DNA of 64,000 nt from Botryllus schlosseri (taxonomy: Eukaryota): assembly GCA_051294905.1 (NCBI GenBank), contig CM119373.1, positions 35,278,001 to 35,342,000 on the forward strand. Direction: 5' to 3'. Position numbers and translations under genes: made by a program. The first letter of the stretch is position 1. Every line of letters starts with the position of its first letter. The notes below the pieces were generated by a model. That model did not search any database. It was given only the letters and a program-made list of their open reading frames with translations, and had not been told where the DNA came from. Below are positions 109-64,000 of this stretch, piece by piece.

Positions 109-2004
109 ATGGATATCGTGAACATCTTGCCAGATGAGATGTGGGTCAAGATTCTTGATTACCTCCCTCTGCACGACCGTCTTGAATGGGTAAAATTTAC
201 AAACAAAAGGCTTTTGCAGCTTGCGGGAGACGTGCCTGCAGTCCAAAATCTCGATTTTCACGGATGTAGTTATGTATCGAATGATCTGTTTCTAAAAATA
301 ATCAACCGTTCAAAGGACAGTGTGAGATTTTTATCGTTTCGGGACTGCGCTTGGCTCTCGAATCAAATCTGCACCACGATGCCCAGATTGAAAAATCTTG
401 TTACGCTGGATATATTGGGGTGTTTCTTGAGTAGCGAAACGTTGCACAGTCTACTCCACGCTACGCGCTCCATAAAAAGATTGGCTCTATCCACTACCGA
501 ACTGGTCATGAAAGATTTTTGTCGGCGGCAGTCAAAACGTGGATTGTCACTTCGGGTCTTACATGTAGAATTGCTTCACGATCCTAAAAAACTCGGCAGT
601 CGCCAAACCAGAACGGTGTTGAAGAATTTTATCAAGACATGTTGTTATTCTAAACCTCATTGCATTTCAGTCCAAACTCTCAAGCATTTGCCTCTAGGTG
701 ATTTTGAAGATATATTCATCAAGGCAAATCTTGCGGTTCATAGAGACTCCTTACAAAGAGTGATGCGGGAGGCTTGTGATAACGCTTACTACAATCAGAT
801 ACTGATTGCAGAGACTTTACATAGAGATGACAGTCCTCTGTCGGCCGGTTGCTTGGATGAAGCCCGGGTGCTCTGTCTTCCTATGCAGGGATTGAGGCAT
901 GGGAGTATGCACGCATCATGCTATTGTAAAGGAGAATACCTGCCTGATGAACTGCATGAACTGGAGTATCTTATTTGCTCTAGGAACGAATATGGTGATG
1001 GTGATGATCCAGATACTGCTGAGGCAGTTTTGCAAAATGGCAGTATTCCGAAACTGACACATCTAGACTTGGGCAGACGGTGCGCTTCTTATTTTGGTGA
1101 CACCGAGGCATTCCCGGGAGTATGCAAGAAATTACTATCTTTCACAAACCTCGTTGAGCTTAATGTGTGTGGGCTTGATTTGAATGCTAACATGCTTCTA
1201 TCAGCGATTACGGACATGAAACATTTGAAGGGTTTGTCTTTTTCGCTCCATCTTCCTATACAAACTGTCCCGGATCCAGAGCAGGATGTGATGAATTTTA
1301 CAAGTAAGACGGGAGACGCTAATGAAAGTTGCAGGTATTCAATATTTTTGTCGAAATTGGTGAAAAATTTCCCAGATTTGGAGAAGTTGGAAATAAGTTG
1401 TAGCATGGATGCCCGAAAATGTGTTGCTGTCGGTGATTTGAAACCAATTGGGACTCTGGGCAAGCTTTGTTGTCTGTCTCTACATGGATTTATTTTGGAC
1501 GATGTGGATCAGCTTGCACAAATCCTGTCTAAATGCACGAAGATATCATCATTGGACCTAAGTCACTTTGAGACTGATGTTGTCCGTGATTTTTCAGAGT
1601 GTTTTGCTTCGTTACGTCATCTCATTTATCTACGACTTGCCCATGATGACTTGGAGTCTGTCTCGAAATTCCACGATTTGCACATGAGTAGCAATCTTCA
1701 AAGATTCACTCTGTATTCAAAGTCGACATTGTCAGCAGCGTGGATCGAGTCATTTCTGGGACCGGTTGTTGCAACTTGCGATCATTTCTGTATGTGCCAT
1801 ATAGAATGTCAAAATGTGAACGTGGGTGTTAAAAAGATGATTGCAAAGTACCGGAAGCTTTGTGAGTCAAAATATCGTAACAATGTGGTATTGTCATGCA
1901 GTAATGATTGTATCAGCCAACATCCAGTGTGTCAAAGTTGGCAGGGTAGGTCGTTTTCATCTGTGGCCACATACAGCCCTTTTGACTTTCTGAAGATGCC
2001 TTGA
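109..2004 (+). CDS. FBXL18-like: F-box/LRR protein (FBXL18-like), intact paralog 1, 631 aa
   Basis: Uninterrupted ORF. N-terminal F-box (LPDEMWVKILDYLP), repeated LxxLxL units, and C-terminal HPVCQSWQGRSFSSVATYSPFDF. Segments such as FLSFRDCAWL..MPRLKNLVTLDILGCFLSS, FLSKLVKNFPDLEKLEI and LQRFTLYS...FCMCHI recall human FBXL18 (from memory). Acceptor-like ttttcAG at 70-71. Confidence 0.92.
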   Translation: MDIVNILPDEMWVKILDYLPLHDRLEWVKFTNKRLLQLAGDVPAVQNLDFHGCSYVSNDLFLKIINRSKDSVRFLSFRDCAWLSNQICTTMPRLKNLVTLDILGCFLSSETLHSLLHATRSIKRLALSTTELVMKDFCRRQSKRGLSLRVLHVELLHDPKKLGSRQTRTVLKNFIKTCCYSKPHCISVQTLKHLPLGDFEDIFIKANLAVHRDSLQRVMREACDNAYYNQILIAETLHRDDSPLSAGCLDEARVLCLPMQGLRHGSMHASCYCKGEYLPDELHELEYLICSRNEYGDGDDPDTAEAVLQNGSIPKLTHLDLGRRCASYFGDTEAFPGVCKKLLSFTNLVELNVCGLDLNANMLLSAITDMKHLKGLSFSLHLPIQTVPDPEQDVMNFTSKTGDANESCRYSIFLSKLVKNFPDLEKLEISCSMDARKCVAVGDLKPIGTLGKLCCLSLHGFILDDVDQLAQILSKCTKISSLDLSHFETDVVRDFSECFASLRHLIYLRLAHDDLESVSKFHDLHMSSNLQRFTLYSKSTLSAAWIESFLGPVVATCDHFCMCHIECQNVNVGVKKMIAKYRKLCESKYRNNVVLSCSNDCISQHPVCQSWQGRSFSSVATYSPFDFLKMP

Positions 2005-4281
2005 GTGCAAGTAAACCGGTTTACCATCACATTTCTGTTTTGAATTTCGTTCAACGTCATTGATTTGCCATTTTCTTTGAATTATTACTTTTCGTTAGGT
2101 TTTGTTATCTTGTTCATTTTCTCGATACTCAGATGTCAGAACGATCCTCAAATAGGCTAGCTACCCAGTGTGTCAATTGTATGATATGGTTTGCAATTTT
2201 AGAATTTGCCTAAACCAAGAGTTGGAGAGTAGTTGCATCCAAATTTCCACACTCACCCAAAATTCACTCGATATGAACCATTTGGTAAGTTTTTCTCTAA
2301 TCCATGATGGCTTTGTCAATTCCCTGTCATTAATATGTTTATTACGGCATCGGCAGTGAATAAATTTGTGTTGAAGTTGTTTTTTAAACTGTGTGATATT
2401 ATTGACTTCTACATTCCATTTCGGATATGAACATTGTTACCGGTATGTTGATTTTTGTTCTTATTTGAACTGTGGTTTCTGTTTCTAACTGCGTATTTGA
2501 GATCTTCCCAGTTATCACATGTATTTAGTAGGAATAATCATTATTCTACCTAACTGAACCCTACAATATCATTAAATATGGCCTGAATTTGATTCAGTAT
2601 GAATACTATAACAGGTCGTCCTTAATCTCAAAATAGTTGGAAATATCTGACACAAATTTGGAGTTTTTTTTATGTATTCTATTAGTGCATATCCACAATT
2701 ACACCATAAAAACTCTCATCCAATGTCATGTGAACAAATTGAACATAGAAGCTGACTAGATGGAACTTATAAATTAGTTCATCTACGGTGTTATTCACAA
2801 TTTTAGTTATGCTAACTAATCACCGTATTGGCTCAGTGTGATTTTGTCATTTCATCATACTAAATATGAATCACAGCATTGTCTTGTCATAATTGCCTTC
2901 AAATTACTGCCAGCATGTTATATCTTATATGAACTGCTGTTTTTCTCAATTCAATATCTAGAAACGAAATGATCATGCTTACTGTGTACATTTGATCATC
3001 AAAGAACATTTTCATCACTAGTTTTTTAATGTAGTCAAACGTCCAGAGTTTCAATTCATTAAATGTATGTTTATGCTAATGGGTAATTTATGTTGTCACG
3101 GAGCATTTTTCAATTTGTAGAAATCTGATTGCGACTTTGATGGAAATTTATTTTCTCTGCAAACGTAATCTAGCTCTATAGATTACACGATGCACTAAGT
3201 CTCCCAATTTTGCGTCACCTGAACACCAATTCACTGCATAAATCGTCATTGTAAAACATTCTTACCTGAAACATATCTTAACATTGAGTTAGGATTGCTT
3301 CAAAAGGGTATCTCCTCGAAAATCTGAGATGTTGGTGCACAGCAGTCATAATTATTACACGATAAGTGGTATTTTTGGTTCACGCCTGACGGATTAGAAT
3401 TGTGATGTCTGGTTTTCTATTGTGTTAATTGTTGGCATTGTGATATCACCTATTATTTTTCTTTAGTGTAATTCATTAGTATAATTTGTCAATCTGGATG
3501 TGTCTATGAACGACAAGTTTCTTCTGGATTAGTCTGGAAAATTTGCTAATCACACCACTGCGGAAGTGAGAAAGTGAGAGTAAATTACGTAAGTCATTGG
3601 TTCTTTATTCTTTTGAGATGTCAACTGGCACTGCCTTACTAAGATTATTGGGAAGTCAACTTTGTAGAGCTGGGATACCTATCGGTAATGCCCGTGATGG
3701 ACCTACATTTTAAATGTTTCGATCCCTATAGATATGTTGTGTCACAGGCCACTCTGGCAAACAAGTGTCTGTATTATCTGTTTCTGTATAATGTTGTGAT
3801 AGTTCATTTCTTGAGTATTATTTATTGACTATTTCGTCATGACATCTCAAGTCTGGTATCCTACAGGATATTTTTGTGAGGTTCTGTCGCTCCTTTGGCT
3901 ACTCACTAGTATTGATATTAATTTTAACTCATTGAAGCATGCCGGATATTAAATCTAGATTCCAGCACCGAATTTTCACCTTAGTCAAATTCATTGTGAA
4001 AAGTCAGGGTACATGGAATAAGTATTGGTCCAAAACAAGCGTTTTCGTATAATTTGGAGTTTTGAATGATGATGGTAAAAAACGTATAGGTTTTGATTTG
4101 GAGTATAGCTCTGAATTTGAGGTGCGGACTGTTCTCAATCTCTCTAGCCTTGTGTGAATATCTGACCTTTGTTTTTTCCTAATTCAAATAAGCACTGCTC
4201 TATATCATTGCAATTGATATAGAAGAGAAGACCGTAACATATCAGCCTTTTATATTCAGATAACAGTTGCAAGATTTCATG

Positions 4282-6147
4282 ATGGATATTGTGAGCTGCT
4301 TGCCTGATGAAATCTGGATAAAGATCCTTGATCACCTACCAGTACATGACCGTCTCGAATGGGTTAAATTTACACACAGAAGATTTTTTCATCTCGCTGG
4401 AGACATGCCTGCTGTCGAAAATCTCGATTTTCACGGGTGTAGTTATGTATCGAGCAACACGTTTCTGCGTATAATCAAGCGCTCGAGAGACAGTGTGAGA
4501 TTTTTATCTTTCCGCGATTGCGCTTGGCTTTCGGATCAAATCTGCACCACCATGCCAAGATTGAAAAATCTCGTTACTCTGGATATCATGGGATGTTTCT
4601 TGAGCAGCGAAATCTTACACAGTCTACTTCGCTCTACTCGTTCCATAAAAAAATTAGCTTTATCCACTACGGAACTGGTCATGAAAGATTTTTGTCGGTT
4701 GCAGTCAAAACGCGGACTGTCACTTCGAGTGTTACACGTAGAATTGCTTCACGATCCCGAAAAAGTCTGTAGTGACGAAACCAGAACGGTGTTGAAGAAT
4801 TTCATCAAGACATGCTGTTATTCTAAACCGCACTGCATTACAGTCCAAACGCTCAAGCATTTGCCTCTTTACGAATTTCAGGATATTCTAATAGAAGCCA
4901 ACCTTATAGTGTATCGAGACTCAATCCACAGAGTGATGAGGGAGGATTACGCTGAAACATACCAAAATCAGATGCTGTTTGCCGTTGCTTTACATCGTGA
5001 CGGCAGTGAACTGTCATCAGGTTGCTTAGATGCAGCCCGCGTGCTGTCTCTTCCTATGCAGATGAGACATAGGAATATACTTGGATCGTGTTATTGTAAA
5101 GGGAAATGCCTGCCTTTTACGCTACATGAACTGGAGTATCTCATTTGCTCAAGAGATGAATATTGTGATGACCCAGATACTGCTGAAACGGTTTTGCTTA
5201 ACTGCCGCATTCCAAAACTTACCCATCTAGACTTGGGCAGACGGTTCGATTCTTGTTTGGGGTCCTTTGACGATATATTCAAGAAATTACCGTCTTTCAC
5301 AAACCTAGTTGAACTGAATCTGTCTGGCCTGGACTTGGATGCGAACACGCTGCTGATTGCAATTGTGGGCATGAAATATTTGAAGGGTTTGTCATTCTCA
5401 CTTCACATTCCATCACAATGTGACTCAAAACAGAATGGAATGGTTTTAAGGTCAAGGGACAGAGATGCAGGTCGCATATATTCAATATTTTTGTCCAAGT
5501 TGACGACAAATTTCCCAGGTTTGGAAAAGCTGGAACTGATCTGTAGCGTGGATGCAAGAAAATACGTTACTGTCTGTGATCTGAAACCAATTGCAAAGCT
5601 CACCAAACTGCGTCATCTATCTCTACATCGATTTCCTTTGGACAATGTGGATCAGCTCGCACAGATCCTGTCCGAGAATATGAATATTTCTTCATTAGAT
5701 CTCGGTCACTTTGAGACAGATGTTGTCTGTGATTTTTCTGAGTGTTTTGCTTCGTTACGCAATCTCAATTATCTACGACTTGCCCATGATGATTTAGAGT
5801 CTGTATCGAAATTCCGCAATTTGCACATGAGTAGAAATCTTCAAAGATTCACTCTGTATTCGAATTCCACCTTGTCACCGGCGTGGATCGAGTCATTTCT
5901 GGGACCGGTTGTTGCAACCTGCAATCTGTTCTGTATGTGCCATATTGCTTGCAAAAATGTGGATGCAGATGTTAAAAGGCTAATTGCAAAATACCGGCAA
6001 ATTTGTGAATCGAAATACCGTAACAAGGTGATATTGTCATGCAGTGGTAATCGTATGACCCAACATCCAGTGTGCCAAAGTTGGCAGGGACGCGCAATCT
6101 CACAGGTCGCCACATACAGCCCTTTTGACATCGTAAAAAAACCATGA
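4282..6147 (+). CDS. FBXL18-like: F-box/LRR protein (FBXL18-like), intact paralog 2, 621 aa (alternative ATG at 4279)
   Basis: Uninterrupted ORF colinear with paralog 1. Start placed at the conserved MDIV; acceptor-like AG at 4258-4259. Confidence 0.92.
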   Translation: MDIVSCLPDEIWIKILDHLPVHDRLEWVKFTHRRFFHLAGDMPAVENLDFHGCSYVSSNTFLRIIKRSRDSVRFLSFRDCAWLSDQICTTMPRLKNLVTLDIMGCFLSSEILHSLLRSTRSIKKLALSTTELVMKDFCRLQSKRGLSLRVLHVELLHDPEKVCSDETRTVLKNFIKTCCYSKPHCITVQTLKHLPLYEFQDILIEANLIVYRDSIHRVMREDYAETYQNQMLFAVALHRDGSELSSGCLDAARVLSLPMQMRHRNILGSCYCKGKCLPFTLHELEYLICSRDEYCDDPDTAETVLLNCRIPKLTHLDLGRRFDSCLGSFDDIFKKLPSFTNLVELNLSGLDLDANTLLIAIVGMKYLKGLSFSLHIPSQCDSKQNGMVLRSRDRDAGRIYSIFLSKLTTNFPGLEKLELICSVDARKYVTVCDLKPIAKLTKLRHLSLHRFPLDNVDQLAQILSENMNISSLDLGHFETDVVCDFSECFASLRNLNYLRLAHDDLESVSKFRNLHMSRNLQRFTLYSNSTLSPAWIESFLGPVVATCNLFCMCHIACKNVDADVKRLIAKYRQICESKYRNKVILSCSGNRMTQHPVCQSWQGRAISQVATYSPFDIVKKP

Positions 6148-8467: not shown

Positions 8468-10324
8468 ATGGATATTGTTGGCGGCTTGCCCGATGAAATA
8501 TGGTTGAAGATTCTCGGTTACCTACCGGTACACGATCGTCTTGAATGGGTTAAGTTTACAAACAGAAGATTTTTACAGCTTGCTGGAGATATCACCGCTG
8601 TCCAAAATCTCGATTTTCACGGATGTAGTTATGTATCGAACGATCAGTTTTTGAAGATAATCAATCGTTCGAAGGACAGTGTGAGATTTTTATCTTTCCG
8701 GGACTGTGCTTGGTTCTCGAATCAAATTTGCACCACCATGCCGAGATTGGAAAATCTTGTTACACTGGATGTATTGGGTTGTTTCTTGAGTAGCGAAACA
8801 TTACATAGTCTACTTGGTGCCACATGCTCCTTAAAAAGACTGGCTCTATCCATTACGGAACAGGTCATGACAGATTTTTGTCTCTTGAAGTCAAAACGCA
8901 GATTGTCACTTCGAGTCTTGCATGTGGAATTGCTTCGCGATCCCAAAACTTTCTATGGTAGCATAAGCCAAACCATGACGGTGTTGAGTGATTTTATTAA
9001 TACATGCTGTCACATGCCGCACTGCGTTTCAGTCCAAACGCTGAAGTATATACCTCTTGAAGATTTTAAAAACATTATGATTGAGGCAAATCCTGCGATT
9101 GATCGTGACTCCATCCAAATGGTGACGAGGGAAGATTGTGATGAAACTTATCTAAATCGGTTACTGATTGCCGTTGCTTTACATAGGGATGTGAGTTCTC
9201 TGTCGGTTGGTTGCTTAGATGAATCGCGATTACTCTGCCTTCTTATGCAGATAAGACATGAGAACTTGCTCCCATCTGAACTACATCCGCATTTTTATTC
9301 CCCGCGGGACGAATATGTTGATGATCCAGATTCTGCTGATTTTGTTTTGTTTAATTGCTGGATCCCAAAACTGAGACATCTAAACATCGACAGATATTGT
9401 AGTTTTGATTTTGGTGTCATTGATGCATCTCCTCGTATATGCAAGAAACTACCAACTTTCACAAACCTTGTTGAGCTCAATGTATGGGGGCTGGATTTGC
9501 ATGCTAACATGCTTCTATTAGCGATTATGGATATGGAACATTTGAAGGGTTTGTCTTTTTCGCTCCATCTTCCTAAACAATGTGAGCTGGATCCAGGGCA
9601 GGATGTGTGGAATTATAAAGCTGAGACAATAGATGCCGATGAAGAAAGTTGCAGATATTCGATATTTTTGTCGAAATTGGTGAACAATTTCCCGGATTTG
9701 AAAAAGCTTGAAATGAAGTGTAGCGAACATGCCCGAAAATTCGTTTCTGTCAGTGAATTGGAACCAATCGGGATACTGGGCCAACTTCGCCATCTATCTC
9801 TACACAGATTCATTTTGGACGATGTAGATCAGCTTGTACAAATCCTATCCAAATGCATGAAAATATCATCATTGGATCTCGGTCACTTTGAGACTGATGT
9901 TGCCCATGATTTTTCAGAGTGTTTTGCTTCGTTGCGCCATCTCACTTATCTACGACTTGCCCATGATGACTTGGAGGGTGTATCGAAATTCCACGATTTG
10001 CACATGAGTAGCAATCTTCAAAGATTCACTTTTTATTCAGAGTCCACCTTGTCACCGGCGTGGATCGAGTCATTTCTGGGACCGGTTGTTGCAACTTGCG
10101 ATCTGTTCTGTATGTGCCATATCGAATGTCAATATGTGAATGCGGCTGTGAAAAAGTTGATTGCAAAGTACCGGAAGCTTTGTGAATCAAAATATCGTAA
10201 CAATGTGGTGTTGTCATGCAGTAATGAACTTGTCAGCCAACATCCAGTGTGTCAAAGTTGGCAGGCACGTTCGTTCTCTACTGTTGCCACGTGCAGCCCT
10301 TTTGACTTTGTAAAGAGACCATGA
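8468..10324 (+). CDS. FBXL18-like: F-box/LRR protein (FBXL18-like), intact chimeric paralog 3, 618 aa
   Basis: Uninterrupted ORF; acceptor AG at 8413-8414. The N-terminus matches the 55085 copy and the body matches the 59338 copy. Confidence 0.92.
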   Translation: MDIVGGLPDEIWLKILGYLPVHDRLEWVKFTNRRFLQLAGDITAVQNLDFHGCSYVSNDQFLKIINRSKDSVRFLSFRDCAWFSNQICTTMPRLENLVTLDVLGCFLSSETLHSLLGATCSLKRLALSITEQVMTDFCLLKSKRRLSLRVLHVELLRDPKTFYGSISQTMTVLSDFINTCCHMPHCVSVQTLKYIPLEDFKNIMIEANPAIDRDSIQMVTREDCDETYLNRLLIAVALHRDVSSLSVGCLDESRLLCLLMQIRHENLLPSELHPHFYSPRDEYVDDPDSADFVLFNCWIPKLRHLNIDRYCSFDFGVIDASPRICKKLPTFTNLVELNVWGLDLHANMLLLAIMDMEHLKGLSFSLHLPKQCELDPGQDVWNYKAETIDADEESCRYSIFLSKLVNNFPDLKKLEMKCSEHARKFVSVSELEPIGILGQLRHLSLHRFILDDVDQLVQILSKCMKISSLDLGHFETDVAHDFSECFASLRHLTYLRLAHDDLEGVSKFHDLHMSSNLQRFTFYSESTLSPAWIESFLGPVVATCDLFCMCHIECQYVNAAVKKLIAKYRKLCESKYRNNVVLSCSNELVSQHPVCQSWQARSFSTVATCSPFDFVKRP

Positions 10325-11155: not shown

Positions 11156-11419
11156 AGGCTGCAGCGTGGATCCAGTCATTTCTGGGACCTGTCGTTGCAG
11201 CCTGGGACCTATCGAATGTGAAAAGATTTTCGCGAATGTGAGAAAGGTCATGGCAAAATACCGGAATATTTGCAAAACGAAGTATCGTAGCAGTGTGGTG
11301 TTGTTGTGAAGGTGCAATGATTATCATCTCAGCCAATATCCAGTATGTCAATGTTGGCAATGAAGGTCATTTACAACTGTGGCCATATACTAACCTTTTG
11401 ACTTCTAAATATGCCTCGG
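11156..11419 (+). pseudogene. Collapsed F-box/LRR relic: 5' leader fused directly to the last ~90 codons
   Basis: Leader with acceptor (AG 11113-11114) runs into gcagcgtggatccagtcatttctgggacc (AAWIxSFLGP). ATG and about 1.6 kb of CDS are missing; stops and indels are present. Confidence 0.85.
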
Positions 11420-11647
11420 GTGCAGATAATTGTATAATTGTAATTGTATAATTTGGGTTTTTGAATGACTATGCCCAAGAATTATTGTATGTTGATTTGG
11501 ATTATAGCTTTGGATTTCATGCTGGGACTGCACACCATCGAACTATCCTTCTCTTAAAATCTCCCTTTTCCCCCAATTCAAACAAGCGGTGCTCGATGTA
11601 TCATTCGAATGGTATCCCTCTTCTATTTTCAGATGATAGTGTCAATA

Positions 11648-13046
11648 ATGGATGTTGTGAGTAGCTTGCCAGATGAAATGTGGTTGAAGATTCTCGAATA
11701 CCTTCCACTTCATGACCGTTTTGAATGGGTCAAACTTACGAAAAAAGGTTATTTCACCTTGCTGGAGACATATCTGCAGTCCAAGATCTCGATTTTCTCG
11801 GATGTAGTTATGTATCGAGCGATCAGTTTTTGAAAATAATCAATCGTTCGACGGACAGTGTGAGATTTTTGTCCTTACTGGACTGCGCTTGGTTTTCGAA
11901 TCAAACCTGCACCACCATGCCGAGATTGAAAAATCTTGTTACAGTGGATATATTGGGGTTCTTCTTGAGTAGCGAAGCATTACACAGTCTACTTCGTGCC
12001 ACATACTCCATAAAAAGATAGGTTCTCTCCACTACAGAACAGGTCATGACAGATTTTTGTCGGTTGCAGTCAAAATGCGGATTGTCACTTCGAGTCTTGC
12101 ATGTGAAATTTCTCCATGATCCTGAAAAACTTTATAGTTTCCAAACCACAACAGTGTTGAGGAATTTTATTAAGATATGCTGCCATTCTAAACCACACCG
12201 CTTTTCAGTTCAAACGCTCAAGCGTTTGGATCTACAAGAGTTAATAGATATATTCTGGGACGCAAAGCTCAAGATATGCAAAGTATCCACTCGAAGACAA
12301 TTGAGGGATGAATATGATCAACAATACCAAAATGACATACTAATTGCTGTTCCTTTACATCAAGATGGCTGTCCTCCTTGCTTGCGGGACGAACATTATG
12401 ATGACCTATCTTTACCTGAGGCAGTTTTTCTGAAACACAGCATTCGGAAAGTGACACATCTAGACTTGGGAAACCGTCACGCTCTTTTCAATTATGAATT
12501 CCAGGGTTTATGTACGAAATGACCATCTTTCTCAAAACTTGTTGAGCTGAACGTGTGTGGACGGGACTTCGACACTAACATGCTCCTGTTATCGATTATG
12601 GACTTGAAACAATTGTTCGTTTCGTCTTTTTCGCTCCATCTACCTTTACAATGTAAGCCGGATCCAAATCAGAATGTGATGAATTTTACGACAACTGAGA
12701 CAAAGGGCAATGATCCGAGTTGCCGATATTCAATATTTTTGTCGAAATTGGTGAAATATTTCCCAAATTTGGAAAAGCTGGAAATGAGGTATTGCATGGA
12801 TGCCCAAAAATACACTACTGTCAGTAATTTGGAAGCGATTGGGATGTTGGCCAAACTTCGGTATCTATCTCTACATAGATTTCCTTTGAACGATGTAAAT
12901 CAGCTTGCTAACATCCTCTCCAAATGCACGAATATAGCATCATTGGATCTCGGTCACTTTCAGACTGACGTTGCTTGTGAATTTTCAAATTGTTTTGGTT
13001 TGTTACGCATTCTCATTTATCTATGACTTGCCCATGATGATTTGGA
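11648..13046 (+). pseudogene. F-box/LRR pseudogene, 3'-truncated
   Basis: Frameshift in the A-run near 11740. Stops at 12019 (TAG), 12520 (TGA) and 13024 (TGA). Homology ends at gatgatttgga (13046), where hAT sequence begins. Confidence 0.9.
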
Positions 13047-13798
13047 CATCTACATACATGAGATGTTAAGGCGCATTCAAAACAAATCTGTGACTCTGGA
13101 AATGTCAACAGTACAAAGAAAATTATGCTCAATTTCCTATACTGGAGGAGAGAAAACCTAGTACCAACACTATACATTTGTAACTGTGATACGAAATTTA
13201 ACTACTGAATATTCACCCTCTTTTCCGGCATTCCTTCTCTACAAAATGAATTCTGACTATTCAGTACTCTGTTTAATGTGGATGCCAATACAATTGCCTG
13301 AAAATTTCAAACGGGCCTTTTTGAAATGCGATGCAGTTGAATTGAATGGCAAATTTTATACAAAGAGCATATCGCTGCATGACTTTGACAAAGAGTACGT
13401 TCTTGAAATTGGTCTTTATCCTAGCTTGACCAGCAATGCAAAAGAAATTGCATCGATTTTTGGACAATAGTTTTGAACAATGAAATTCACGAAGAGCAAG
13501 CTAAGATCACGTATTTCGGACGTCCGTTTTGAATAGGGTCTGATTCTTGTTTCATCTGACTTGTTACCAGAAATTGAAAGAAAACCTTTCACAAAGCAAG
13601 CTGCGTCAATTGTCACAATTATTCTGTGTCGTTGAAGTGTAAATACATGTGACTTCGGATTGGTATGATTGAGATTGCAGCAATGTAGAATAATATACCG
13701 AAGTGAGCGTAAAATATAGTACTAAGAAACAATCCGGCCCGCCAAAGATTGTACACCCGAAATTTGGCCCGCGACTAGCAAAAGGTTGCCGACCCCTG
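13047..13798 (+). mobile_element. Right end of a hAT (Buster/Charlie-type) element with degenerate transposase C-terminus
   Basis: Terminal GGTTGCCGACCCCTG ends at 13798. Translation YPSLTSNAKEIASIFG...MKFTKSKLRSRISD..LILVSSDLLPEI resembles the hAT dimerization region. No left TIR is visible. Confidence 0.75.
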
Positions 13799-41854: not shown

Positions 41855-42016
41855 TGTAATGTACTAACTTAAGACTTTATTCATGCGAACATAACAGAAG
41901 GTCCTGACGTGCAGGGCAACAGAAAACGAATGACTATCGTCGTTTACTCGACACAGTACAACACAATTCAGTAATTGTAATCAAGTAATAATAATGTCCA
42001 ATCACGATACACATCA
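41855..42016 (-). repeat. 5' LTR of the Gypsy element
   Basis: Identical to 37390-37551, followed by TSD AGCAG. Confidence 0.96.
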
Positions 42017-48403: not shown

Positions 48404-49033
48404 CGATAAGGATTATCTGTAGTATTGATGTTACGTTCAAAACTGTTTCATTTTTTTAAAGAGAATGATGTCAATTCGTATAATTTTTGCGGGCTTTGTG
48501 ATAAAGACTTCTGGCAAATATTCACCATTGGTGTGACGCGCCATCTGTTGAATCTGCAAGAAGTAAGAAGCTAATCAACTGAAATGTGTTCATGCAACTA
48601 AGTCTTGTTGTTTCAGTTATGGAAAAAGTCGTCAACAAATCAATGTCAAAACAATATATCCGATAAATCAGCCTCGATCGCTGAATCAGATACCACTTTG
48701 CCGGGAGAAGCGTCAGTTAATGAGGATTTAGATACCACCGTGCCCGTAGAGCCGTCAGTCCGTTGTGATTTAGCTTCTTCAGAAGCAGCTATGCCAGTAA
48801 GTATTTGATAAAATTTTGCAATGAATTTAGCTAACCTGAATGCCTCAGCAGTCCACACCTCCTCAAGAAGACGACAACTCGACAGATCTCCTTGTGGATG
48901 ATATGGTAAATATCCACATTATTCTAGTAGGACACCAACTCATATTTTCATCGATTTTTAATCAGCCACCATGCAGTATCAAGCACCTCGTCAGGTAAAT
49001 TACTAAATAGTATGTAATGTGGGTATAGAAGTA

Positions 49034-49833: not shown

Positions 49834-50636
49834 AAACTAATATTTACACATTCAGGTGGATTCAAGTTGACTGTTAAAGAAGCTACTCGTCAGCTGCAAA
49901 ATGAATTTGACAACGAGGACTGCAACTGGCAGAAAATCGTGACTCTTTTCAAACAATTGTACGGGTACCGGCGTGCTCAGCTAACAAAGAAAGGGATCCC
50001 TCTCAATGAAATTCTGCAAACTTTCCCAACCTTGGGTGATATCAGACTGGTGAGCGCATGTATGATTTACCATTAGGCCTCTGCGATATCGAGTGCGCGT
50101 CAGTGTATTGAGTATTACAGTCGAGACTTGTATTCCTGTATCACTCATTCTGATGTCACAACATGAATGATTTGGGGTAGGAATTATGTGCCTTTTATAC
50201 GGCCAAAAAGAATATAGTGATAGTTCTTAATATAATACTGAAAAATTTCTTTACAGGTCAGGGAAGACTTCTGGAAGTTAGTTGCACCAACTACAATTGA
50301 TGAGATGAGAACTAATTACACAAAAATGATGAATACATTGGATAAGATATTTGGGGTAAATTGGGACTTGCAAAGCTATTATGATTTAGAATGATTGATA
50401 ATAACTTCTCGATTTTTTGTTTTTCAGTACAGTGTGAATGATCAACTTAAAAATCTGCTGAAAGTACAATCGCAACTCGCCGATGGCAGAGTAAAGTGGA
50501 AGAAGACCGACGCCAGCCTGAACTCTAAAAAGAAGTCCACAGTATCTGCATTGTCAGTGGAACAGGTACTTGATTATAACTAAGTTTATATAATGATTTC
50601 AATCACTGATACATGTAGCTGACTGTGCGGCAGTGG

Positions 50637-50770
50637 TGAGCGAGATAGTGTAATGGTTATGCGTCCGGGTTCTCGATCGGTAGGTCGTGGGTCATACCAA
50701 AGACTGTAAAACTTATTGTGTGGCGTGTCTAAATAACTTGGTGAATTACTGGTGTAGAGTTGTTACCCCT
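50637..50770 (+). mobile_element. Possible tRNA-derived SINE fragment in an intron
   Basis: A-box-like TAGTGTAATGG at 50646-50656, a tRNA-like head lacking the B box, then GTCATACCAAAGACTGTAAAA, which I recall from invertebrate SINE bodies. Confidence 0.4.
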
Positions 50771-51299
50771 GTTGTTGACAGTCGTATTCATAGTTTGAAT
50801 TTTTAAAAAATACTTGCATTTCAGGCTCAAGATACTGAAATCCACTGCAAACGATCACACCCTCCACATTTGGTTGTTGCCAAGCACGAAAATGGCAAGA
50901 TCCAGGGCTGGATTCTGGCTGATGGCCACAAAATTTCTTGCCAAGAATACGATACGGTCTTTGACATGTTAATTATGTTAATATTATGGCATGCTATTAT
51001 GCCTGGGACCTATCATATCCGAAAGATTTTCAGCTTCTGGCTTTCGTTCAACATGTGGTAATAGGTGACAAAAGTGCTCAATATGTGTCTACCAGATTGG
51101 CTGATTTCTTTTTAAGATTTCAACAATCTGCTCCAGAATAAGACTTTTTCCGGGTTTCTCACTATCGTTTTTTGAGTAGTACTTCACAAGTACGTTAGAT
51201 CGTACAAATCCTGTGAGGTTAAGTTCCTCTCCGCATTCGTTTATTGAGTATGGTACTTTGAAGTACGTTTTAGTACTTGTACTAATTATGTTACATAAT

Positions 51300-51525
51300 C
51301 CAACTTCTGTAATTAGTTTTTTGTTTGTAATTCTTGATTGAAAAATTCGGCTCTGATTTATGCTGGTATGTTACATGATCCAAATTCTGTAATTTGTTTT
51401 TTTTTGTAATTCTAAATTGAAAAATTCGGCTCTGATTTATGCTGGTATGTTACATGATCCAAATTCTGTAATTAGTTTTTTTTTTGTAATTCTAAATTAA
51501 AAAATTCGGCTCTGATTTATGCTGA
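51300..51525. repeat. About 70-bp subterminal tandem repeat (3 copies) of the CACTA-type element
   Basis: ttctgtaatt...aaaaattcggctctgatttatgctg occurs three times. A GGAAACACCT(T)AA triplet follows at about 51752-51797. Confidence 0.8.
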
Positions 51526-52257
51526 TGCAAGTCCTATTTTTTGCCTTCAATTTCATTTCGTTTACTTGTTGATTTCTTTGCACGTTCATTTTTCCGTTTA
51601 TAATAAAATGTTCCATGCGGGATTCGAACAGTTTTAGATGTCGTCGAGTACACCAGGTGGTTTTAGTGTTATTTCGAGGACAGGTCGACTTGACATGTAC
51701 GCCAGATTATTTAGTATTCTATATCAGGCCGCATTGAGGTATCACCTAGATCGGAAACACCTAAATACGGAAACACCTTAATATGGAAACACCTAATCGA
51801 TATCATCTAGGACATTTTTCGTGGGATCTTTTTTGACGAAAAAAGTGTTGTCTTTTCTGATTTCAATGACATGAAAAAACTTACAGTGTATGTCAATTGT
51901 ATGACATGGTTTGCAATTTTAGAATTTGCCTAAAATAAGAGATGAAGAGTATTTGCATCCAAATTTTCACACCCACCCAAAATTCACTGAATATGATCCA
52001 CTTGGAAGTTTTTGTCTAATCCATGATGGCTTTGTCAATTCCCTGTCATTAATATGTGATATTACCGTATCAGCAGTGAATAAATTTGTGTTGAAGTTGA
52101 AGTTGATGTTTAAACAATGCGATAGTATTGGCTTCTACATTCCATTTCGTACATGAACATTGTTACCAGTACGTTGATTTTTCCTCTTACTTGACCTGTG
52201 GTTTCTGTTTCTAACTGCGTATTTGAGATCTTCCCAGTTATCACATGTATTTGGTAG

Positions 52258-52660
52258 GATTTTTCAGAGGGTTTTGCTTCGTTACGCAATCTCGTTTATC
52301 TACGACTTGTCCACAATGATTTGGAGTCTGTATCGATATTCAGCAATTTGCAAATGAGTAGAAATCTTCAAAGATTCACTCTTTATTCAAAGTCTACCTT
52401 GTCAGCGGCGTGGATCGAGTCATTTCTGGGACCGGTCGTTGCAACCTGCAATCTGTTCTGTATGTGCCATATCGTGTGTAAAAATGTGGATGCTAAATTG
52501 CAAAATACCGCAACATTTGTGAATCGAAATACCGTAACAAGGTGATATTGTCATGCAGTGATAATCGTATTACCCAACATCCAGTGTGCCAAAGTTGGCA
52601 GGGACGCTCGATCTCACAAGTTGCCACATACAGCCCTTTTGACATTGTAAAAAACCATGA
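52258..52660 (+). pseudogene. 3' fragment of a paralog-2-type gene
   Basis: Matches 5731-6147 and ends PFDIVKKP*. It is joined directly to spacer homologous to about 2530. Confidence 0.88.
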
Positions 52661-52670
52661 GTGTAAATTT

Positions 52671-55084: not shown

Positions 55085-56944
55085 ATGGATATCGTGGGCG
55101 GCTTGCCCGATGAAATCTGGCTGAAGATTCTCGGTTACCTACCAGTACATGATCGTCTTGAATGGGTTAAGTTTACAAACAGAAGATTTTGTCAGCTTGC
55201 TGGAGATATAACCGCAGTCCAAAATCTCGATTTTCACGGATGTAGTTATGTATCGAACGATCAGTTTTTGAAAATAATCAATCGTTCAAAGGATAGTGTG
55301 AGATTTTTATCTTTCCGGGACTGTGCTTGGCTCTCGAATCAAATCTGCACCACCATGCCTAGATTGAAAAATCTTGTTACGCTGGATATATTGGGGTGTT
55401 TCTTGAACAGCGAAACATTACACAGTCTTCTTCGTGCCACTCGCTCCATAAAAAAGTTGGGTATATCCACTACAGAACTCGTCATGAAAGATTTTTGTCA
55501 GTTGCAGTCAAAACGCGGATTGTCACTTCGAGTCTTACATGTAGAATTGCTTCACGATCCAGAAAAAGTCAGCAGTCGCCAAACCAGAACGGTGTTAAGG
55601 AATTTTATCAAGACATGCTGTCATTCTAAACCACACTGCATTACAGTCCAAACTCTCAAGCATTTGCCTCTAGATGATTTCGACGATATATTCATTGAGG
55701 CAAATCTTGCGGTCTATCGAGACTCCGTCCAAAGAGTGATGAGGGAAACTTATGATCGAGCATACCAAAATCAGATGCTGATTGCAGTGGCTTTTCATCG
55801 AGTAGACAGTGCTCTGTCGAAAGGTTGCTTAGATATGGCTAAGGTACTTTGTCTTCCAATGCTGTTGAGACATGAGAGAAAATATGTATCCTGTTACTGT
55901 AAAGGACGTCCCCTCCCTAACACACTGCATGAACTCGAGTATCTTATTTGCTCCCGTAATGAATATTGGGGTGATCCAGATTCAGCTGAGGATCTTTTGC
56001 TGAACCACAGTCTTCCGAATCTCACACATCTAGACTTGGGCCACCGGCTCTGTTCTTATGTTGATATCTCCGAGGGTATATGCACGAGATTACCATTTTT
56101 CACAAACCTTGTTGAGCTGAATGTGTATGGGGTAAGCATGGATGCTAACGTCCTTTTGAATTCGATTATGGGCATGAAACATTTGAATGGTTTGTCTTTT
56201 TCACTACATATTCCTTTGCAATGTGATCCAGAACAGAACGTGACTGAGACAAGAGAAACAGATGCAAGTGGCAGATACTCAATGTTTTTGTTGAAATTGG
56301 TGAATAATTTACCAGGCTTAGAAAAGTTGGAACTGCTCTGTAGCGTAGATGCCAGAAAATGTTTTGCTGTCTGTGATCTAAAACCAATAGTTGAGCTGGC
56401 AAAACTTCGTTATCTATCTCTACATAGATTTCCTCTGGACAATGTAGATCAGCTCGCAAAGATCCTATCCAGCAACAAGAATATATCATCATTGGATCTT
56501 GGTCACTTTGAAACAGATGTTGTCTGTGATTTTTCAGAGTGTTTTGCTTCGCTACGCAATCTCATTTATCTACGACTTGCCCATAATGATTTGGAGTCTG
56601 TCTCAAAATTCAAAGATTTGCAAATGAGTAGAAATCTTCAAAGATTCACTCTTCATTCAAAGTCCTCCTTGTCAGCAGCGTATATCGAGTCATTCTTGGG
56701 ACCATTCGTTGCAACCTGCGATTTGTTTTGTATGGCACATATCCAATGTCAAAATGTGGATGAAGATGTGAAAAAGATGATTGAAAAGTACCGCAATATT
56801 TGTGAATCGAAATATCGTAACAACGTGGTATTGTCATGCAGCGATGATCGTATCAGCCAACATCCAGTCTGTCAAAGCTGGCAGGGAAGGTCGTTTTCAT
56901 CTGTTGCCACATACAGCCCTTTTGACTTCCTAAAGATGCCTTGA
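55085..56944 (+). CDS. FBXL18-like: F-box/LRR protein (FBXL18-like), intact paralog, 619 aa
   Basis: Uninterrupted ORF from MDIV; acceptor AG at 55030-55031. Confidence 0.92.
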   Translation: MDIVGGLPDEIWLKILGYLPVHDRLEWVKFTNRRFCQLAGDITAVQNLDFHGCSYVSNDQFLKIINRSKDSVRFLSFRDCAWLSNQICTTMPRLKNLVTLDILGCFLNSETLHSLLRATRSIKKLGISTTELVMKDFCQLQSKRGLSLRVLHVELLHDPEKVSSRQTRTVLRNFIKTCCHSKPHCITVQTLKHLPLDDFDDIFIEANLAVYRDSVQRVMRETYDRAYQNQMLIAVAFHRVDSALSKGCLDMAKVLCLPMLLRHERKYVSCYCKGRPLPNTLHELEYLICSRNEYWGDPDSAEDLLLNHSLPNLTHLDLGHRLCSYVDISEGICTRLPFFTNLVELNVYGVSMDANVLLNSIMGMKHLNGLSFSLHIPLQCDPEQNVTETRETDASGRYSMFLLKLVNNLPGLEKLELLCSVDARKCFAVCDLKPIVELAKLRYLSLHRFPLDNVDQLAKILSSNKNISSLDLGHFETDVVCDFSECFASLRNLIYLRLAHNDLESVSKFKDLQMSRNLQRFTLHSKSSLSAAYIESFLGPFVATCDLFCMAHIQCQNVDEDVKKMIEKYRNICESKYRNNVVLSCSDDRISQHPVCQSWQGRSFSSVATYSPFDFLKMP

Positions 56945-61194: not shown

Positions 61195-62860
61195 CTGTGG
61201 ATGGTCCCATAACTTGACGTCATATTTCTGTTTAGAATTTTGTTTTTTTCAGTTTTCATCTGAACTTTGATTGATTTCATTTACCGGTACATCTTTCAAC
61301 TTATCCATAATGCTCAGAACCTCGGTCTTGCGGGCTAACTTCCCACCATGTCAATTGTATGACATACCGTAGTCCACAATTTAAGAAGGGTCCAAAGTAA
61401 AGTAGGTTGTTCGATAGAAATATCTACACCCCTCCTGATATCACAAAACATGATACCATGTCATCCACGTTGCCGATTTGAATTGAATTCCTGATGGTCG
61501 TGTTCATCTCAATGTCATTATTTATTCCTGCATTAGTAGAAAAATTGAATTCTGTTGATCATAAGGTAATAATAATTGTACACAATATCAGCTATTGCGT
61601 TTGTACATATTGCTGTCTTGAGGAAGGCTTCTGTAGCCTAAGCGTACATTTGACTTTCCGTTTTTTGTTTTACATACCTAAATGTCATTTTAGCTTTTAT
61701 CTCGCACTATTGACATATTCAACACCGATTTTGTTATCAGATGAATATGGTATAATATATTGGCATTTTCACTACCGTAGCTGCAAATAATTTACTGCCA
61801 TGCCATCATGTTGTATTTTTTCAGCACTGCTTTTGTTCCTCGATAAATTTTTGGATTACACTTCTGGATTTAGTTCGTTTGTTGCCATTATTGTACATAT
61901 GACTTGGCTTTGTTGCAATTCATACAAATGAACAGTTTTCAAGTTATCATCTGTATCGCCCTTCATTTTCAGATAATAGTTTTGTAGTGTTTACTTGTTA
62001 CCACACTTTCATCAGGCTGCAGCGTGGATCCAGTCATTTCTGGGACCTGTCGTTGCAACCTGCCATCTGTTATGCATGGGACCTATCGAATGTGAAAAGA
62101 TTTTCGCGAATGTGAGAAAGGTCATGGCAAAATACCGGAATATTTGCAAAACAAAGTATCGTAGCAGTGTGGTGTTGTCGTGGAAGGTGCAATGGTTATC
62201 ATCTCAGCCAATATCCAGTATGTCAATGTTGGCAATGAAGGTCATTTACAACTGTGGCCATATACTAACCTTTTGACTTCTAAATATGCCTCGGGTGCAG
62301 ATAATTGTATAATTGTAATTGTATAATTTGGGTTTTTGAATGACTATGCCCAAGAATTATTGTATGTTGATTTGGATTATAGCTTTGGATTTCATGCTGG
62401 GACTGCACACCATCGAACTATCCTTCTCTTAAAATCACCCTTTTCCCCCAATTCAAACAAGCGGTGCTCGATGTATCATTCGTATGGTATCGCTCTTCTA
62501 TTTTCACATGATGGTGTCAATAATGGATGTTGTGAGTAGCTTGCCAGATGAAATGTGGTTGAAGATTCTCGAATACCTTCCACTTCATGACCGTTTTGAA
62601 TGGGTCAAACTTACGAAAAAAAGGTTATTTCACCTTGCTGGAGACATATCTGCAGTCCAAGATCTCGATTTTCTCGGATGTAGTTATGTATCGAGCGATC
62701 AGTTTTTGAAAATAATCAATCGTTCGACGGACAGTGTGAGATTTTTGTCCTTCCGGGACTGCACATGGCTCTCGAATCAAATCTGCACCACCATGCCGAG
62801 ATTGAAAAATCTTGATACACTGGATATACTGGGGTGTTTCTTGAGTAGCGAAACGTTGCA
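59620..62860 (+). repeat. Segmental duplicate of about 8750-11990 (its 3' half is also repeated at about 44400-46110)
   Basis: Same order in all copies: gene body, spacer, collapsed relic, 230-nt gap, MDVVSS start. Confidence 0.88.
62014..62294 (+). pseudogene. Collapsed leader + C-terminus relic (third copy)
   Basis: Same junction as 11156 and 45262; acceptor AG at 61971-61972. Confidence 0.85.
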
Positions 62861-64000
62861 CAGTCTACTCCACGCTACGCGTTCCATAAAATGATTGGCT
62901 CTATCCACTACCGAACTGGTCATGAAAGATTTTTGTCTGCGGCAGTCAAAACACGAATTGTCACTTCTGGTCTTACATGTAGAATTGCTTCACGATCCCG
63001 GAAAACTCGGCTGGTTTGAAACCAGAACGGTGTTAAAGAATTTTATTAAGACATGTTGTTATTCTAAACCACATTGCATTTCAGTCCAAACTCTCAAGTA
63101 TTTGCCTTTAGATCGTTTTGAAGACATATTCATCGAGACAAATCTTGCTGTTCATAGAGACTCCACCCAGCGAGTGATGCGGGGGGCTTGTGATAAAGCT
63201 TACCATAATCAGATACTGATTGCAGAGACTTTACACAGATATGACAGTCCTCTGTCGGCCGGTTGCTTAGATGATGCCCGGGTGCTCTTTCTTCCTATGC
63301 CGGGATGGAGGCATGGGAGTATGCACGCATCATGTTATTGTGAAGGAATATACCTGCCTGTTGAACTACATGAACTGGAGTATCTTATTTGCTCACGGGA
63401 CGTATATGGTGATGGTACTAGTCCAGATACTGCTGAGGGAGTTTTGCAAAATTGTAGTATTCCGAAACTGACACATCGGGACTTGGGCAGACGGTGCGTT
63501 TCTTATTTTGGTCACGCCGAGGCATTCCCGGGTGTATGCAAGAAATTACCATCTTTCACAAACCTCGTTGAGCTTAATGTGTGTGGGCTGGATTTGAATG
63601 CTAACATGTTTCTATTAGCGATTATGGACATGAAACATTTGAAGGGTTTGTCTTTTTCGCTCCATCTTCCTATTCAATCTGATCCGGATCCTGAACAAGA
63701 CATAATGAATTTCACAACTAAGACATGAGACACGGATGAAAGTTGCAGGTATTCGATGTTTTTATCGAAGTTGGTGAAAAATTTCCCGGATTTGGAAAAG
63801 TTGGAAATAAGTTGTAGCATGGATGCCCGAAAATGCGTTGCTGTCAGTGATTTGGAACCGATTGGGATTCTGGGCAAACTTTGTTATCTATCTCTACATG
63901 GATTCATTTTGGACGATGTAGATCAGCTTGCTCAAATTCTATCCAAATGCATGAAAATATCATCATTGGATCTTGGCCACTTTGAGACTGATGTTGCCCA
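62523..64000 (+). pseudogene. F-box/LRR pseudogene, cut by the window edge
   Basis: In-frame nonsense codons AGA>TGA (62892) and GGA>TGA (63726). The leader acceptor is mutated to CAC (62505-62507). Confidence 0.88.

What the first reader, a model, noticed from the sequence alone, without database searches (positions are those of the whole stretch)
109..64000. Birth-and-death array of at least 18 FBXL18-like F-box/LRR genes: candidate diversified SCF substrate-receptor repertoire
Seen: 7 intact ORFs, 5 long pseudogenes and 6 fragments, all on one strand, each with homologous spacer DNA. This points to DNA-level tandem duplication of a roughly 4-kb unit, and the array runs off the right edge. 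Established: F-box/LRR proteins are SCF (SKP1-CUL1) substrate adaptors, FBXL18 is a single conserved gene in vertebrates, and large fast-evolving F-box expansions in nematodes and plants have been proposed to target foreign proteins. Inference: this may be a lineage-specific, immune-like or conflict-driven ubiquitin-ligase receptor locus built from FBXL18.
Basis: partly seen in the sequence, partly recalled or inferred. Interest (0 to 1): 0.85.

Follow-up and report, generated by a model that had tools for sequence, protein, structure and literature searches.

The report
Tandem array of FBXL18-like F-box genes
A sea-squirt chromosome carries a head-to-tail row of at least 18 copies (7 intact) of a gene for an F-box/leucine-rich-repeat protein most like vertebrate FBXL18; it is a real, still-changing gene-family expansion of a well-known kind, and its targets and purpose remain unknown.

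Summary
The window has 18 same-strand copies of one roughly 630-codon single-exon F-box/LRR gene: 7 intact, 5 long disabled copies and 6 fragments. Spacers are homologous, and the last copy runs off the right edge. The array grew by DNA-level duplication at two scales, a unit of about 4.2 kb and a super-unit of about 16.8 kb, with mosaic exchange between copies. Two young LTR retroelements have inserted into it.

Intact copies are under purifying selection (ML omega 0.39; omega=1 rejected, 2ΔlnL about 200). FBXL18 is the nearest known family by three methods, but identity is only about 15% and the Pfam match covers only the first 70 of 591 model positions. No FBXL18 sequences could be fetched, so descent was not tested by a tree.

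The immune or conflict reading has no support here. No region reaches dN/dS of 1, predicted LRR beta-strands are the least variable positions, and two intact copies gave only trace, paralog-derived reads in subsamples of three bulk RNA-seq runs.

Relatives were found only in Styela clava and one unidentified public run.

The scan had already noted the same array continuing into the adjacent window. This is a new member of a known kind (lineage-specific F-box expansion).

The parts
109..2004 (+). g1, intact F-box/LRR gene, 631 codons
   Evidence: ORF; Pfam F-box and LRR_FBXL18; AF2 models show F-box helices plus an LRR solenoid
4282..6147 (+). g2, intact gene, 621 codons from the ATG
8468..10324 (+). 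g3, intact gene, 618 codons. It is a mosaic: the 5' roughly 300 nt and the upstream kb resemble g15 (94-96%), the rest resembles g16 (97%)
11161..11424 (+). f4, C-terminal fragment with stops and frameshifts shared with f12 and f17
11648..13060 (+). p5, long pseudogene with stops, deletions and a truncated 3' end. Its first 300 nt are 97% identical to p18, the rest 64-84% to any copy
16324..18200 (+). p6, disabled by a 4-nt deletion near 16543 (codon ~73). The remaining 536-codon LRR-only ORF (16590-18200) is open and starts at the conserved Met91
21483..23327 (+). p7, disabled by one stop at 21753 (codon 91). The remaining 521 codons are open
23514..23621 (+). f8, short internal fragment (codons ~266-300)
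32346..34226 (+). g9, intact gene, 626 codons
35422..35688 (+). f10, N-terminal fragment (codons 1-89) with a stop
42533..44425 (+). g11, intact gene, 630 codons
45264..45547 (+). f12, C-terminal fragment
45770..47407 (+). p13, g1-like pseudogene (90%) with a stop at 46313, an 8-nt deletion and a 249-nt deletion
52258..52666 (+). f14, 3' end of a g2-like copy (92% to g2 over the fragment; 94% over the 2.6 kb that includes its spacer); a deletion removed its 5' 1.45 kb
55085..56944 (+). g15, intact gene, 619 codons
59338..61194 (+). g16, intact gene, 618 codons
62016..62299 (+). f17, C-terminal fragment
62523..64000 (+). p18, g1/p13-like copy with stops at 62892 and 63726 and a mutated upstream acceptor (CAC instead of CAG). 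It runs off the window
37390..42016 (-). Ty3/gypsy LTR retrotransposon inserted in the spacer upstream of g11. It has identical 162-bp LTRs, a 5-bp target duplication AGCAG and an open 1405-codon gag-pol ORF
23660..24936 (+). Gag-only LTR element with identical 223-bp LTRs, target duplication CCAAG and a 259-codon ORF with a CCHC knuckle
47575..51883 (.). 4.3-kb insertion that splits the spacer after p13. It contains a 61-bp x 13 minisatellite at 49034-49833

Best explanation
This is a lineage-restricted multigene family of F-box/LRR proteins that are distant structural look-alikes of FBXL18, and probably its derivatives. The genes sit in a tandem array that turns over by unequal crossing-over, segmental duplication, gene conversion, pseudogenisation and transposon insertion.

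Each intact copy has a single coding exon preceded by a conserved 3' splice acceptor.

Inferred mechanism: the N-terminal F-box (residues ~5-45) docks on SKP1 in an SCF (SKP1-CUL1-RBX1) ubiquitin ligase, and the LRR solenoid holds a substrate. Paralogs keep nearly the same N-terminal LRRs and C-terminal LRR strands. They differ mainly in loops and indels of the central third (residues ~190-410), which would tune which protein is bound.

Shown here: the array anatomy, its duplication history, purifying selection, the fold, and FBXL18 as the nearest family. Inferred only: SKP1 binding, ubiquitin-ligase function, and the central region setting specificity.
For: Array and lesions.

Duplication history: 42014-47073 matches 58819-63834 at 91-93%. 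A third, older copy of the same gene order lies at 107-12222. The spacers after g3, g11 and g16 are 96-97% identical. Nearest neighbours change along the genes. p13 and p18 are 96% identical but carry different lesions, while f4, f12 and f17 share theirs.

Selection: dN/dS is below 1 in all 21 pairs of intact copies (0.22-0.61). ML omega is 0.39. lnL is -7456.3 against -7556.1 with omega fixed at 1.

Domains and fold: Pfam F-box, F-box-like and LRR_FBXL18. The AF2 model has pTM 0.71 with alternating strand and helix.

FBXL18 as nearest family.

Splice acceptor: CTATTTTCAG lies 15-55 nt upstream of the ATG in almost every copy.

Family elsewhere: four paralogs less than 50% identical to each other in one other public run, and a Styela clava protein.
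Against: F-box scores hover around the Pfam gathering threshold; only 3 of 7 copies reach it. No SKP1-binding test was possible.

The central variable region is modelled with low confidence (pLDDT below 50), so its role in binding is a guess.

In subsamples of three bulk RNA-seq runs, the two intact copies tested drew 0, 9 and 14 reads. All were only partial matches, most were 95-99% alike, and those on g16 carry a base found in no copy of this window. Expression of these copies is therefore not shown.

The 5' exon or spliced leader that would use the acceptor was not seen.
Confidence: 0.62

Rival explanations
1. One reading: the array is a diversified recognition repertoire driven by conflict with pathogens, viruses, transposons or selfish elements, as proposed for nematode and plant F-box expansions.
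For: There are many paralogs with rapid turnover and mosaic exchange. The central third has the highest amino-acid diversity and frequent in-frame indels. Other samples of the species hold only 8-20% of the 31-mers of 1-10000, which could mean high polymorphism. Published precedent exists for positive selection in C. elegans F-box genes (PMC8120010).
Against: No 30-codon window reaches dN/dS of 1 (maximum 0.72). ML omega for residues 191-345 is 0.49. Predicted beta-strands, including those of the C-terminal LRRs, are the least variable positions. That is unlike VLR, NLR or plant LRR receptors, where strand x-positions vary most. Where coding regions are more diverged than their flanks (g11 against g16), synonymous sites are raised too (dS 0.185), which fits imported conversion tracts rather than selected point changes. 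No induction or tissue data exist.
Confidence: 0.15
2. The array is a largely redundant or decaying expansion. Copies are kept by dosage or are on their way to loss, and sequence differences reflect relaxed constraint only.
For: 11 of 18 copies are dead or fragmentary. Omega is moderately high at 0.39-0.49. Expression is at trace level. Recent transposon insertions lie inside the array.
Against: Seven ORFs of about 1.9 kb stay open at dS up to 0.7, and omega=1 is strongly rejected. Even the LRR-only ORFs of p6 and p7 keep dN/dS of 0.34-0.54. The upstream acceptor block is conserved in units whose spacers are otherwise about 70% identical.
Confidence: 0.18
3. Artefact or mobile-element cargo: the copies are assembly duplications or haplotigs, or the F-box gene is carried by a transposon that multiplied.
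For: Blocks at 8395-12222, 42014-47073 and 58819-63834 are 90-93% identical overall, with 96-100% stretches. That is within the range of allelic divergence in some ascidians.
Against: There are three such blocks in different contexts. Copies differ by 4-25% and by private lesions. No terminal inverted repeats or LTRs bound the units. All copies face the same way with collinear spacers. Independent samples hold parts of the locus.
Confidence: 0.04

Closest known systems
FBXL18 (vertebrate F-box/LRR-repeat protein 18; SCF subunit that ubiquitylates FBXL7, PMC4669792)
   Same: Both have an N-terminal F-box followed directly by a long LRR solenoid of similar total length. FBXL18 is the best Pfam family-specific LRR model. 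It is the best Foldseek hit with both models (E 7.6e-13 and 9.4e-15; the next hit, FBXL13, is about 1000-fold weaker). It is the best ESM-Atlas shape match, TM 0.73/0.66 over 573 residues. It is the nearest or second-nearest language-model cluster for three family members.
   Different: Identity is about 15-16%. The Pfam match covers only model positions 4-73 of 591 and is below threshold in 3 of 7 copies. The family is multi-copy and tandem, with a single coding exon. Its central region is variable. Orthology was not tested.
Lineage-specific F-box expansions in Caenorhabditis and plants (PMC8120010, PMC8665587, PMC12951971)
   Same: Both are tandem clusters of F-box adaptors with fast gain, loss and many pseudogenes, conserved F-box ends and more variable substrate-binding parts.
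   Different: Those families pair the F-box with FTH/FBA2, Kelch or other domains and show documented positive selection. This family has an FBXL18-type LRR, sits in a chordate, and showed no signal of positive selection with the 7 sequences available.
Plant S-locus F-box (SLF/SFB) arrays of collaborative non-self recognition (as summarised in PMC9265791)
   Same: Both are a linked row of many paralogous F-box genes. Ascidians are hermaphrodites in which a sperm-borne ubiquitinating activity of unknown E3 identity acts on the egg-coat protein HrVC70 (PMC9265791).
   Different: No link to a self-sterility locus was shown here, nor gamete expression or haplotype-specific repertoires. SLFs carry FBA domains, not LRRs.
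Fish 'im:7136021' F-box family (ESM-Atlas clusters)
   Same: It is a chordate F-box family with many clusters (36-39 of the 100 nearest) and comes next after FBXL18 in language-model feature space.
   Different: Its proteins are about 435 aa and carry no LRR_FBXL18 annotation. The relationship was not tested by alignment.

Membership tests
F-box protein, FBXL class (SCF substrate receptor) | N-terminal F-box motif of about 40-50 residues | tested here: met
   Pfam F-box or F-box-like match at residues ~5-50 in all 7 intact copies, E 4e-5 to 2e-3. Three of the 7 reach the gathering score; relative P0004 scores 28.1 and 27.6 bits. LPxE..W.KIL..LP..DR is conserved down to 22-30%-identical relatives.
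F-box protein, FBXL class (SCF substrate receptor) | Leucine-rich-repeat domain C-terminal to the F-box | tested here: met
   The AF2 model alternates strand and helix from residue ~47 to ~598, pTM 0.71. The top structural hits are F-box LRR proteins: FBXL18, FBXL13, TIR1, COI1 and FBXL2.
F-box protein, FBXL class (SCF substrate receptor) | Binds SKP1 and assembles with CUL1-RBX1 | not testable with these tools
   Needs co-immunoprecipitation or a complex prediction. No such tool was available.
FBXL18 family (Pfam PF19729 LRR_FBXL18) | Match to the family's LRR model at or above the gathering score (27 bits), over most of the model | tested here: inconclusive
   Scores are 31.1, 35.4, 39.9 and 40.7 bits in g1, g2, g3 and g16, and 22.2-25.4 bits in g9, g11 and g15. 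The best stretch always covers only model positions 4-73 of 591. Relatives score 16.5-19.3 bits or do not match.
FBXL18 family (Pfam PF19729 LRR_FBXL18) | Whole-length structural similarity to FBXL18, better than to other FBXLs | tested here: met
   ESM-Atlas FBXL18 cluster: TM 0.73/0.66, 573 residues aligned, rmsd 5.1, with the next best at 0.52-0.58. Human FBXL18: E 9.4e-15, TM 0.55/0.49, against FBXL13 at 1.9e-11. Both sides are predictions.
FBXL18 family (Pfam PF19729 LRR_FBXL18) | Groups with FBXL18 orthologs in a tree, or reciprocal best hit | not tested
   No FBXL18 or other FBXL sequence could be fetched. Word-indexed searches returned none. The exhaustive search lists only the best 150 hits, and giant LRR proteins fill that list.
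Birth-and-death tandem multigene family | Tandem paralogs of graded divergence, independent pseudogenisation, and duplication of DNA including spacers | tested here: met
   dS ranges from 0.10 to 0.70. Closely related copies carry private lesions. Spacers are collinear and there is a 16.8-kb higher-order repeat.
Diversifying (conflict-type) receptor repertoire | dN/dS above 1 or hypervariability on the ligand-binding surface | tested here: not met
   The maximum windowed dN/dS is 0.72. ML omega is 0.49 or lower in every partition. Predicted strands are the least variable positions. Power is low: 7 sequences, recombination, and no site model was run.

The most novel reading that the evidence does not exclude
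The array is the variable E3-receptor side of an ascidian self/non-self system (gamete self-sterility or colony allorecognition). It would work like the plant S-locus F-box arrays: each paralog would recognise a subset of non-self partner alleles and mark them for proteasomal destruction. This would supply the unidentified ubiquitinating specificity invoked for sperm action on egg-coat proteins (PMC9265791). Nothing here tests it. It is merely not excluded, given many linked paralogs, a variable central region, near-silence in bulk RNA, and possibly high between-individual divergence.
Probability: 0.04. Interest if true: 0.85.

Novelty: new member of a known kind. Interest (0 to 1): 0.35.

Why it matters
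Large, fast-turning-over F-box families are well documented in nematodes and plants and have been linked there to conflict, hybrid incompatibility and self-incompatibility. Chordates are usually described as having small, stable F-box sets.

A long array of FBXL18-type adaptors in a tunicate would be a chordate example of the same evolutionary mode. The scan's note on the adjacent window suggests the array exceeds 100 kb. In the paper library searched I found no description of such an array.

It gives a defined set of paralogs with a conserved scaffold and a variable middle. These could be used to ask what FBXL18-type LRRs bind. Without expression or partner data it remains a descriptive gene-family finding.

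Tried and rejected
1. Fetching FBXL18 or other FBXL sequences for a tree failed. I tried the word-indexed search with one protein, with the N-terminal 160 residues and with a 10-sequence profile. These gave only one relative plus unrelated bacterial LRR proteins. In the exhaustive profile search, the 150 listed hits are mostly giant LRR proteins.

2. The organism behind the four relatives (run SRR25569784) could not be identified. No DNA is served and no paper names the run.

The result was near-empty and the reads came from other copies.

4. Transposon-cargo idea: no repeats bound the units, so I rejected it.

5. A conserved second gene in the spacers: ORFs of 92-153 codons have no Pfam match. 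The three 98-codon ORFs lie in spacers that are 96-97% identical anyway, so their conservation says nothing.

6. Rfam and tRNA scans of the window found nothing.

7. Sequence search of PDB gave only marginal F-box hits: KDM2A at E 0.024 and FBXL17 at 0.34.

8. A first AF2 model from 8 sequences was poor (pTM 0.52). A 14-sequence alignment improved it.


Full report
**What is there.** The window has no N. A six-frame ORF list shows ten + strand ORFs of more than 500 codons and one 1405-codon ORF on the - strand. tblastn with the first ORF finds 18 loci, all on the + strand. Aligning each non-intact locus to its nearest intact copy gives the lesions.
- Seven copies are uninterrupted from an ATG (MDIV... 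or MDMV...) to a stop, 618-631 codons: g1 109-2004, g2 4282-6147, g3 8468-10324, g9 32346-34226, g11 42533-44425, g15 55085-56944 and g16 59338-61194.
- Five are long but disabled: p5 11648-13060, p6 16324-18200, p7 21483-23327, p13 45770-47407, and p18 62523-64000, which runs off the edge.
- Six are fragments: f4, f8, f10, f12, f14 and f17.

**Other features of the window.** The - strand ORF is the gag-pol of a Ty3/gypsy element at 37390-42016. It has identical 162-bp LTRs and a 5-bp target duplication, and it sits in the spacer upstream of g11. A 1.28-kb gag-only LTR element lies at 23660-24936. A 4.3-kb insertion containing a 61-bp minisatellite splits the spacer after p13.

**How the array was built.** Start-to-start distances are 3.2-4.7 kb wherever no foreign DNA has been inserted. 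The spacer after g1 finds homologous spacer segments in most units at 64-75% identity, while coding parts are 75-89% identical.

A higher-order structure sits above the basic unit. 42014-47073 (g11-f12-p13) matches 58819-63834 (g16-f17-p18) at 91-93% with an offset of 16.8 kb. An older copy of the same gene order lies at the left end:
- 107-2533 matches p13 plus its spacer.
- 5731-8293 matches f14 plus its spacer.
- 8395-12222 matches g16-f17-p18.

The 1.3-kb spacers after g3, g11 and g16 are 96-97% identical.

**Mosaic exchange.** The blocks do not respect gene boundaries.
- g3 has the upstream kb and first ~300 nt of g15 (94-96%) and the rest of g16 (97%).
- p5 is 97% identical to p18 for 300 nt and 64-84% to every copy afterwards.
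- g11 is nearest g16 at its 5' end and nearest g9 in its 3' part.

Unequal crossovers or conversion tracts, often with a breakpoint near codons 50-100, have therefore shuffled the copies.

**Lesion sharing.** p13 and p18 are 96% identical yet have no lesion in common, so each died after the duplication. f4, f12 and f17 share their frameshift and stops, so they were copied as dead DNA. This is birth-and-death evolution with exchange between copies.

Divergence of 4-25% between copies, private lesions and three different contexts make assembly artefacts very unlikely. Read depth could not be checked.

**Are the intact copies genes?** All 21 pairs of intact copies have dN below dS (dN 0.05-0.20, dS 0.10-0.70, ratio 0.22-0.61). 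A codon model gives omega of 0.39. Fixing omega at 1 lowers lnL from -7456.3 to -7556.1.

Every copy is preceded, 15-55 nt before the ATG, by a conserved block ending in CTATTTTCAG, which is a textbook 3' splice acceptor. p18 has CAC there. So the coding exon is probably joined to a 5' exon or to a spliced leader; earlier notes of the scan identify the genome as a sea squirt. No read showing that junction was obtained.

p6 and p7 each have a single early lesion, a 4-nt deletion at codon ~73 and a stop at codon 91. Downstream they keep open 536- and 521-codon LRR-only ORFs. These ORFs have dN/dS of 0.34-0.54 against the intact copies and 0.45 against each other. They were disabled recently, or they may still be used without the F-box.

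**What the protein is.** Pfam finds an F-box or F-box-like match at residues ~5-50. The match is near threshold, and 3 of 7 copies reach the gathering score. Directly after it comes a match to LRR_FBXL18 (PF19729), which covers only model positions 4-73 of 591. That match is above the 27-bit cut-off in four copies and at 22-25 bits in three.

An AF2 model from a 14-sequence family alignment (pTM 0.71) shows three F-box helices followed by a strand-helix solenoid to residue ~598. Several stretches between residues 204 and 406 have low confidence.

Evidence that FBXL18 is the nearest family:
- The best shape match in the ESM Atlas is an FBXL18 cluster: TM 0.73 by query and 0.66 by hit, 573 residues aligned. 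Other F-box LRR clusters score 0.44-0.58.
- Foldseek against Swiss-Prot models puts human FBXL18 first with both models, about a thousand-fold ahead of FBXL13.
- Language-model features put FBXL18 clusters first or second for g1 and for two relatives that are only 24-27% identical to g1.

'FBXL18-like' is therefore the right label for the nearest known family. Identity is only about 15%, and no tree could be made because no FBXL18 sequence could be fetched. Descent from FBXL18 remains a reasonable but untested inference.

**Where the family occurs.** An exhaustive profile search of 1.84 billion cluster representatives found five proteins that align from the F-box on. Four are full-length proteins of 608-652 aa, each its own 50%-identity cluster representative, all from short contigs of one public run whose organism I could not identify. 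The fifth is a 304-aa 'uncharacterized protein' of Styela clava (31% identity over 150 residues). The rest of the listed hits are giant LRR proteins matching a few repeats. The window's copies are 74-77% identical to g1 at the protein level, against 22-30% for these relatives. The expansion seen here therefore happened within this lineage.

**Does it look like a diversifying receptor set?**
- Variation is uneven. Mean per-site entropy is 0.37-0.43 in the F-box and N-terminal LRRs, 0.84 in residues 191-410 and 0.50 in the C-terminal LRRs. Most in-frame indels fall in the centre.
- Windowed dN/dS peaks at 0.72 (residues 209-238). ML omega is 0.23 for codons 1-150, 0.46 for 151-410, 0.44 for 411-631 and 0.49 for 191-345. 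The centre is less constrained but is not shown to be positively selected.
- Predicted beta-strands are the least variable class in every region (0.25-0.36). In the C-terminal repeats even the non-leucine strand positions are mostly invariant. The variable part is loops in a poorly modelled stretch.
- g11 and g16 have flanks at 93-97% identity but coding identity of 88%. Synonymous divergence is raised as well (dS 0.185), which fits imported conversion tracts rather than selected point changes.
- With 7 sequences and pervasive recombination, power is low. Site models were not available.

**Expression.** Reads of three bulk RNA-seq runs of the species, plus the contigs of one older run, were laid on 55050-61049, which holds g15, the spacer and most of g16.
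- From 7-13 million reads read per run (6-13% of each run), 0, 9 and 14 reads were laid. All were only partial matches, most 95-99% alike, and some fell in the spacer.
- The reads on the g16 5' end carry A at 59432, as in all other copies, and G at 59447, as in no copy of the window. They come from another copy or allele.
- Some family member is therefore transcribed at trace level. These two intact copies are not shown to be expressed. Tissues and stages are unknown to me.
- Other runs of the species hold 8-20% of the 31-mers of 1-10000, against 56-69% in the probable source sample. This could reflect divergence between individuals, low coverage, or transcripts.

**Verdict.** The functional part (immune-like or conflict-driven) is untested speculation, and the few tests possible did not favour it.

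The most likely function is a set of SCF substrate adaptors with a shared scaffold and a variable central region (confidence about 0.6). Lineage-specific F-box arrays are a known phenomenon (PMC8120010, PMC8665587, PMC12951971). An FBXL18-type array in a tunicate was not found in the searched literature. The scan had already noted the same array continuing into the adjacent window.

Noticed in passing
window 37390-42016 (- strand): Apparently complete Ty3/gypsy LTR retrotransposon. It has 100%-identical 162-bp LTRs (TG...CA), a 5-bp target duplication AGCAG, and one open 1405-codon gag-pol ORF with RT, RNase H and integrase domains. It looks like a very recent insertion into an array spacer.
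   Followed up: partly
window 23660-24936: 1.28-kb LTR element with identical 223-bp LTRs, target duplication CCAAG and a single 259-codon ORF with a CCHC zinc knuckle (gag only). It is a non-autonomous element that must rely on another element's pol.
   Followed up: partly
window 47575-51883: 4.3-kb insertion with no homology to other spacers. It contains a 61-bp x 13 minisatellite (49034-49833, 96% matches) and an 80-bp x 3 repeat (51287-51524). No Pfam-matching ORF was found and its nature is unknown.
   Followed up: no
window 16590-18200 and 21762-23327: The two 'pseudogenes' with a single early lesion keep open LRR-only ORFs of 536 and 521 codons under dN/dS of 0.34-0.54. The first starts at the family's conserved Met91. 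They could encode F-box-less proteins that act as decoys or competitors, or they may have been disabled only recently.
   Followed up: partly
15-55 nt upstream of each ATG, e.g. window 32290-32320, 42480-42505, 59285-59310: A conserved block of about 100 nt ends in CTATTTTCAG before every copy. It is the best-conserved part of the spacers. It is a candidate trans-splice or cis-splice acceptor, possibly with a nearby promoter. The acceptor is mutated to CAC before the pseudogene at 62523.
   Followed up: partly
window 10635-10931, 44741-45037, 61494-61790: Equivalent 98-codon ORFs lie about 310 nt downstream of g3, g11 and g16. They have no Pfam match, and the spacers there are 96-97% identical, so conservation of the ORFs is uninformative.
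   Followed up: partly
window 24937-29404: About 4.5 kb between duplicated spacer segments (20371-21283 matches 29405-30327 at 94.8%) has no match to other units and shows a strong G-over-C skew (0.21 at 24001-26000). It is probably more inserted DNA. It was not identified.
   Followed up: no
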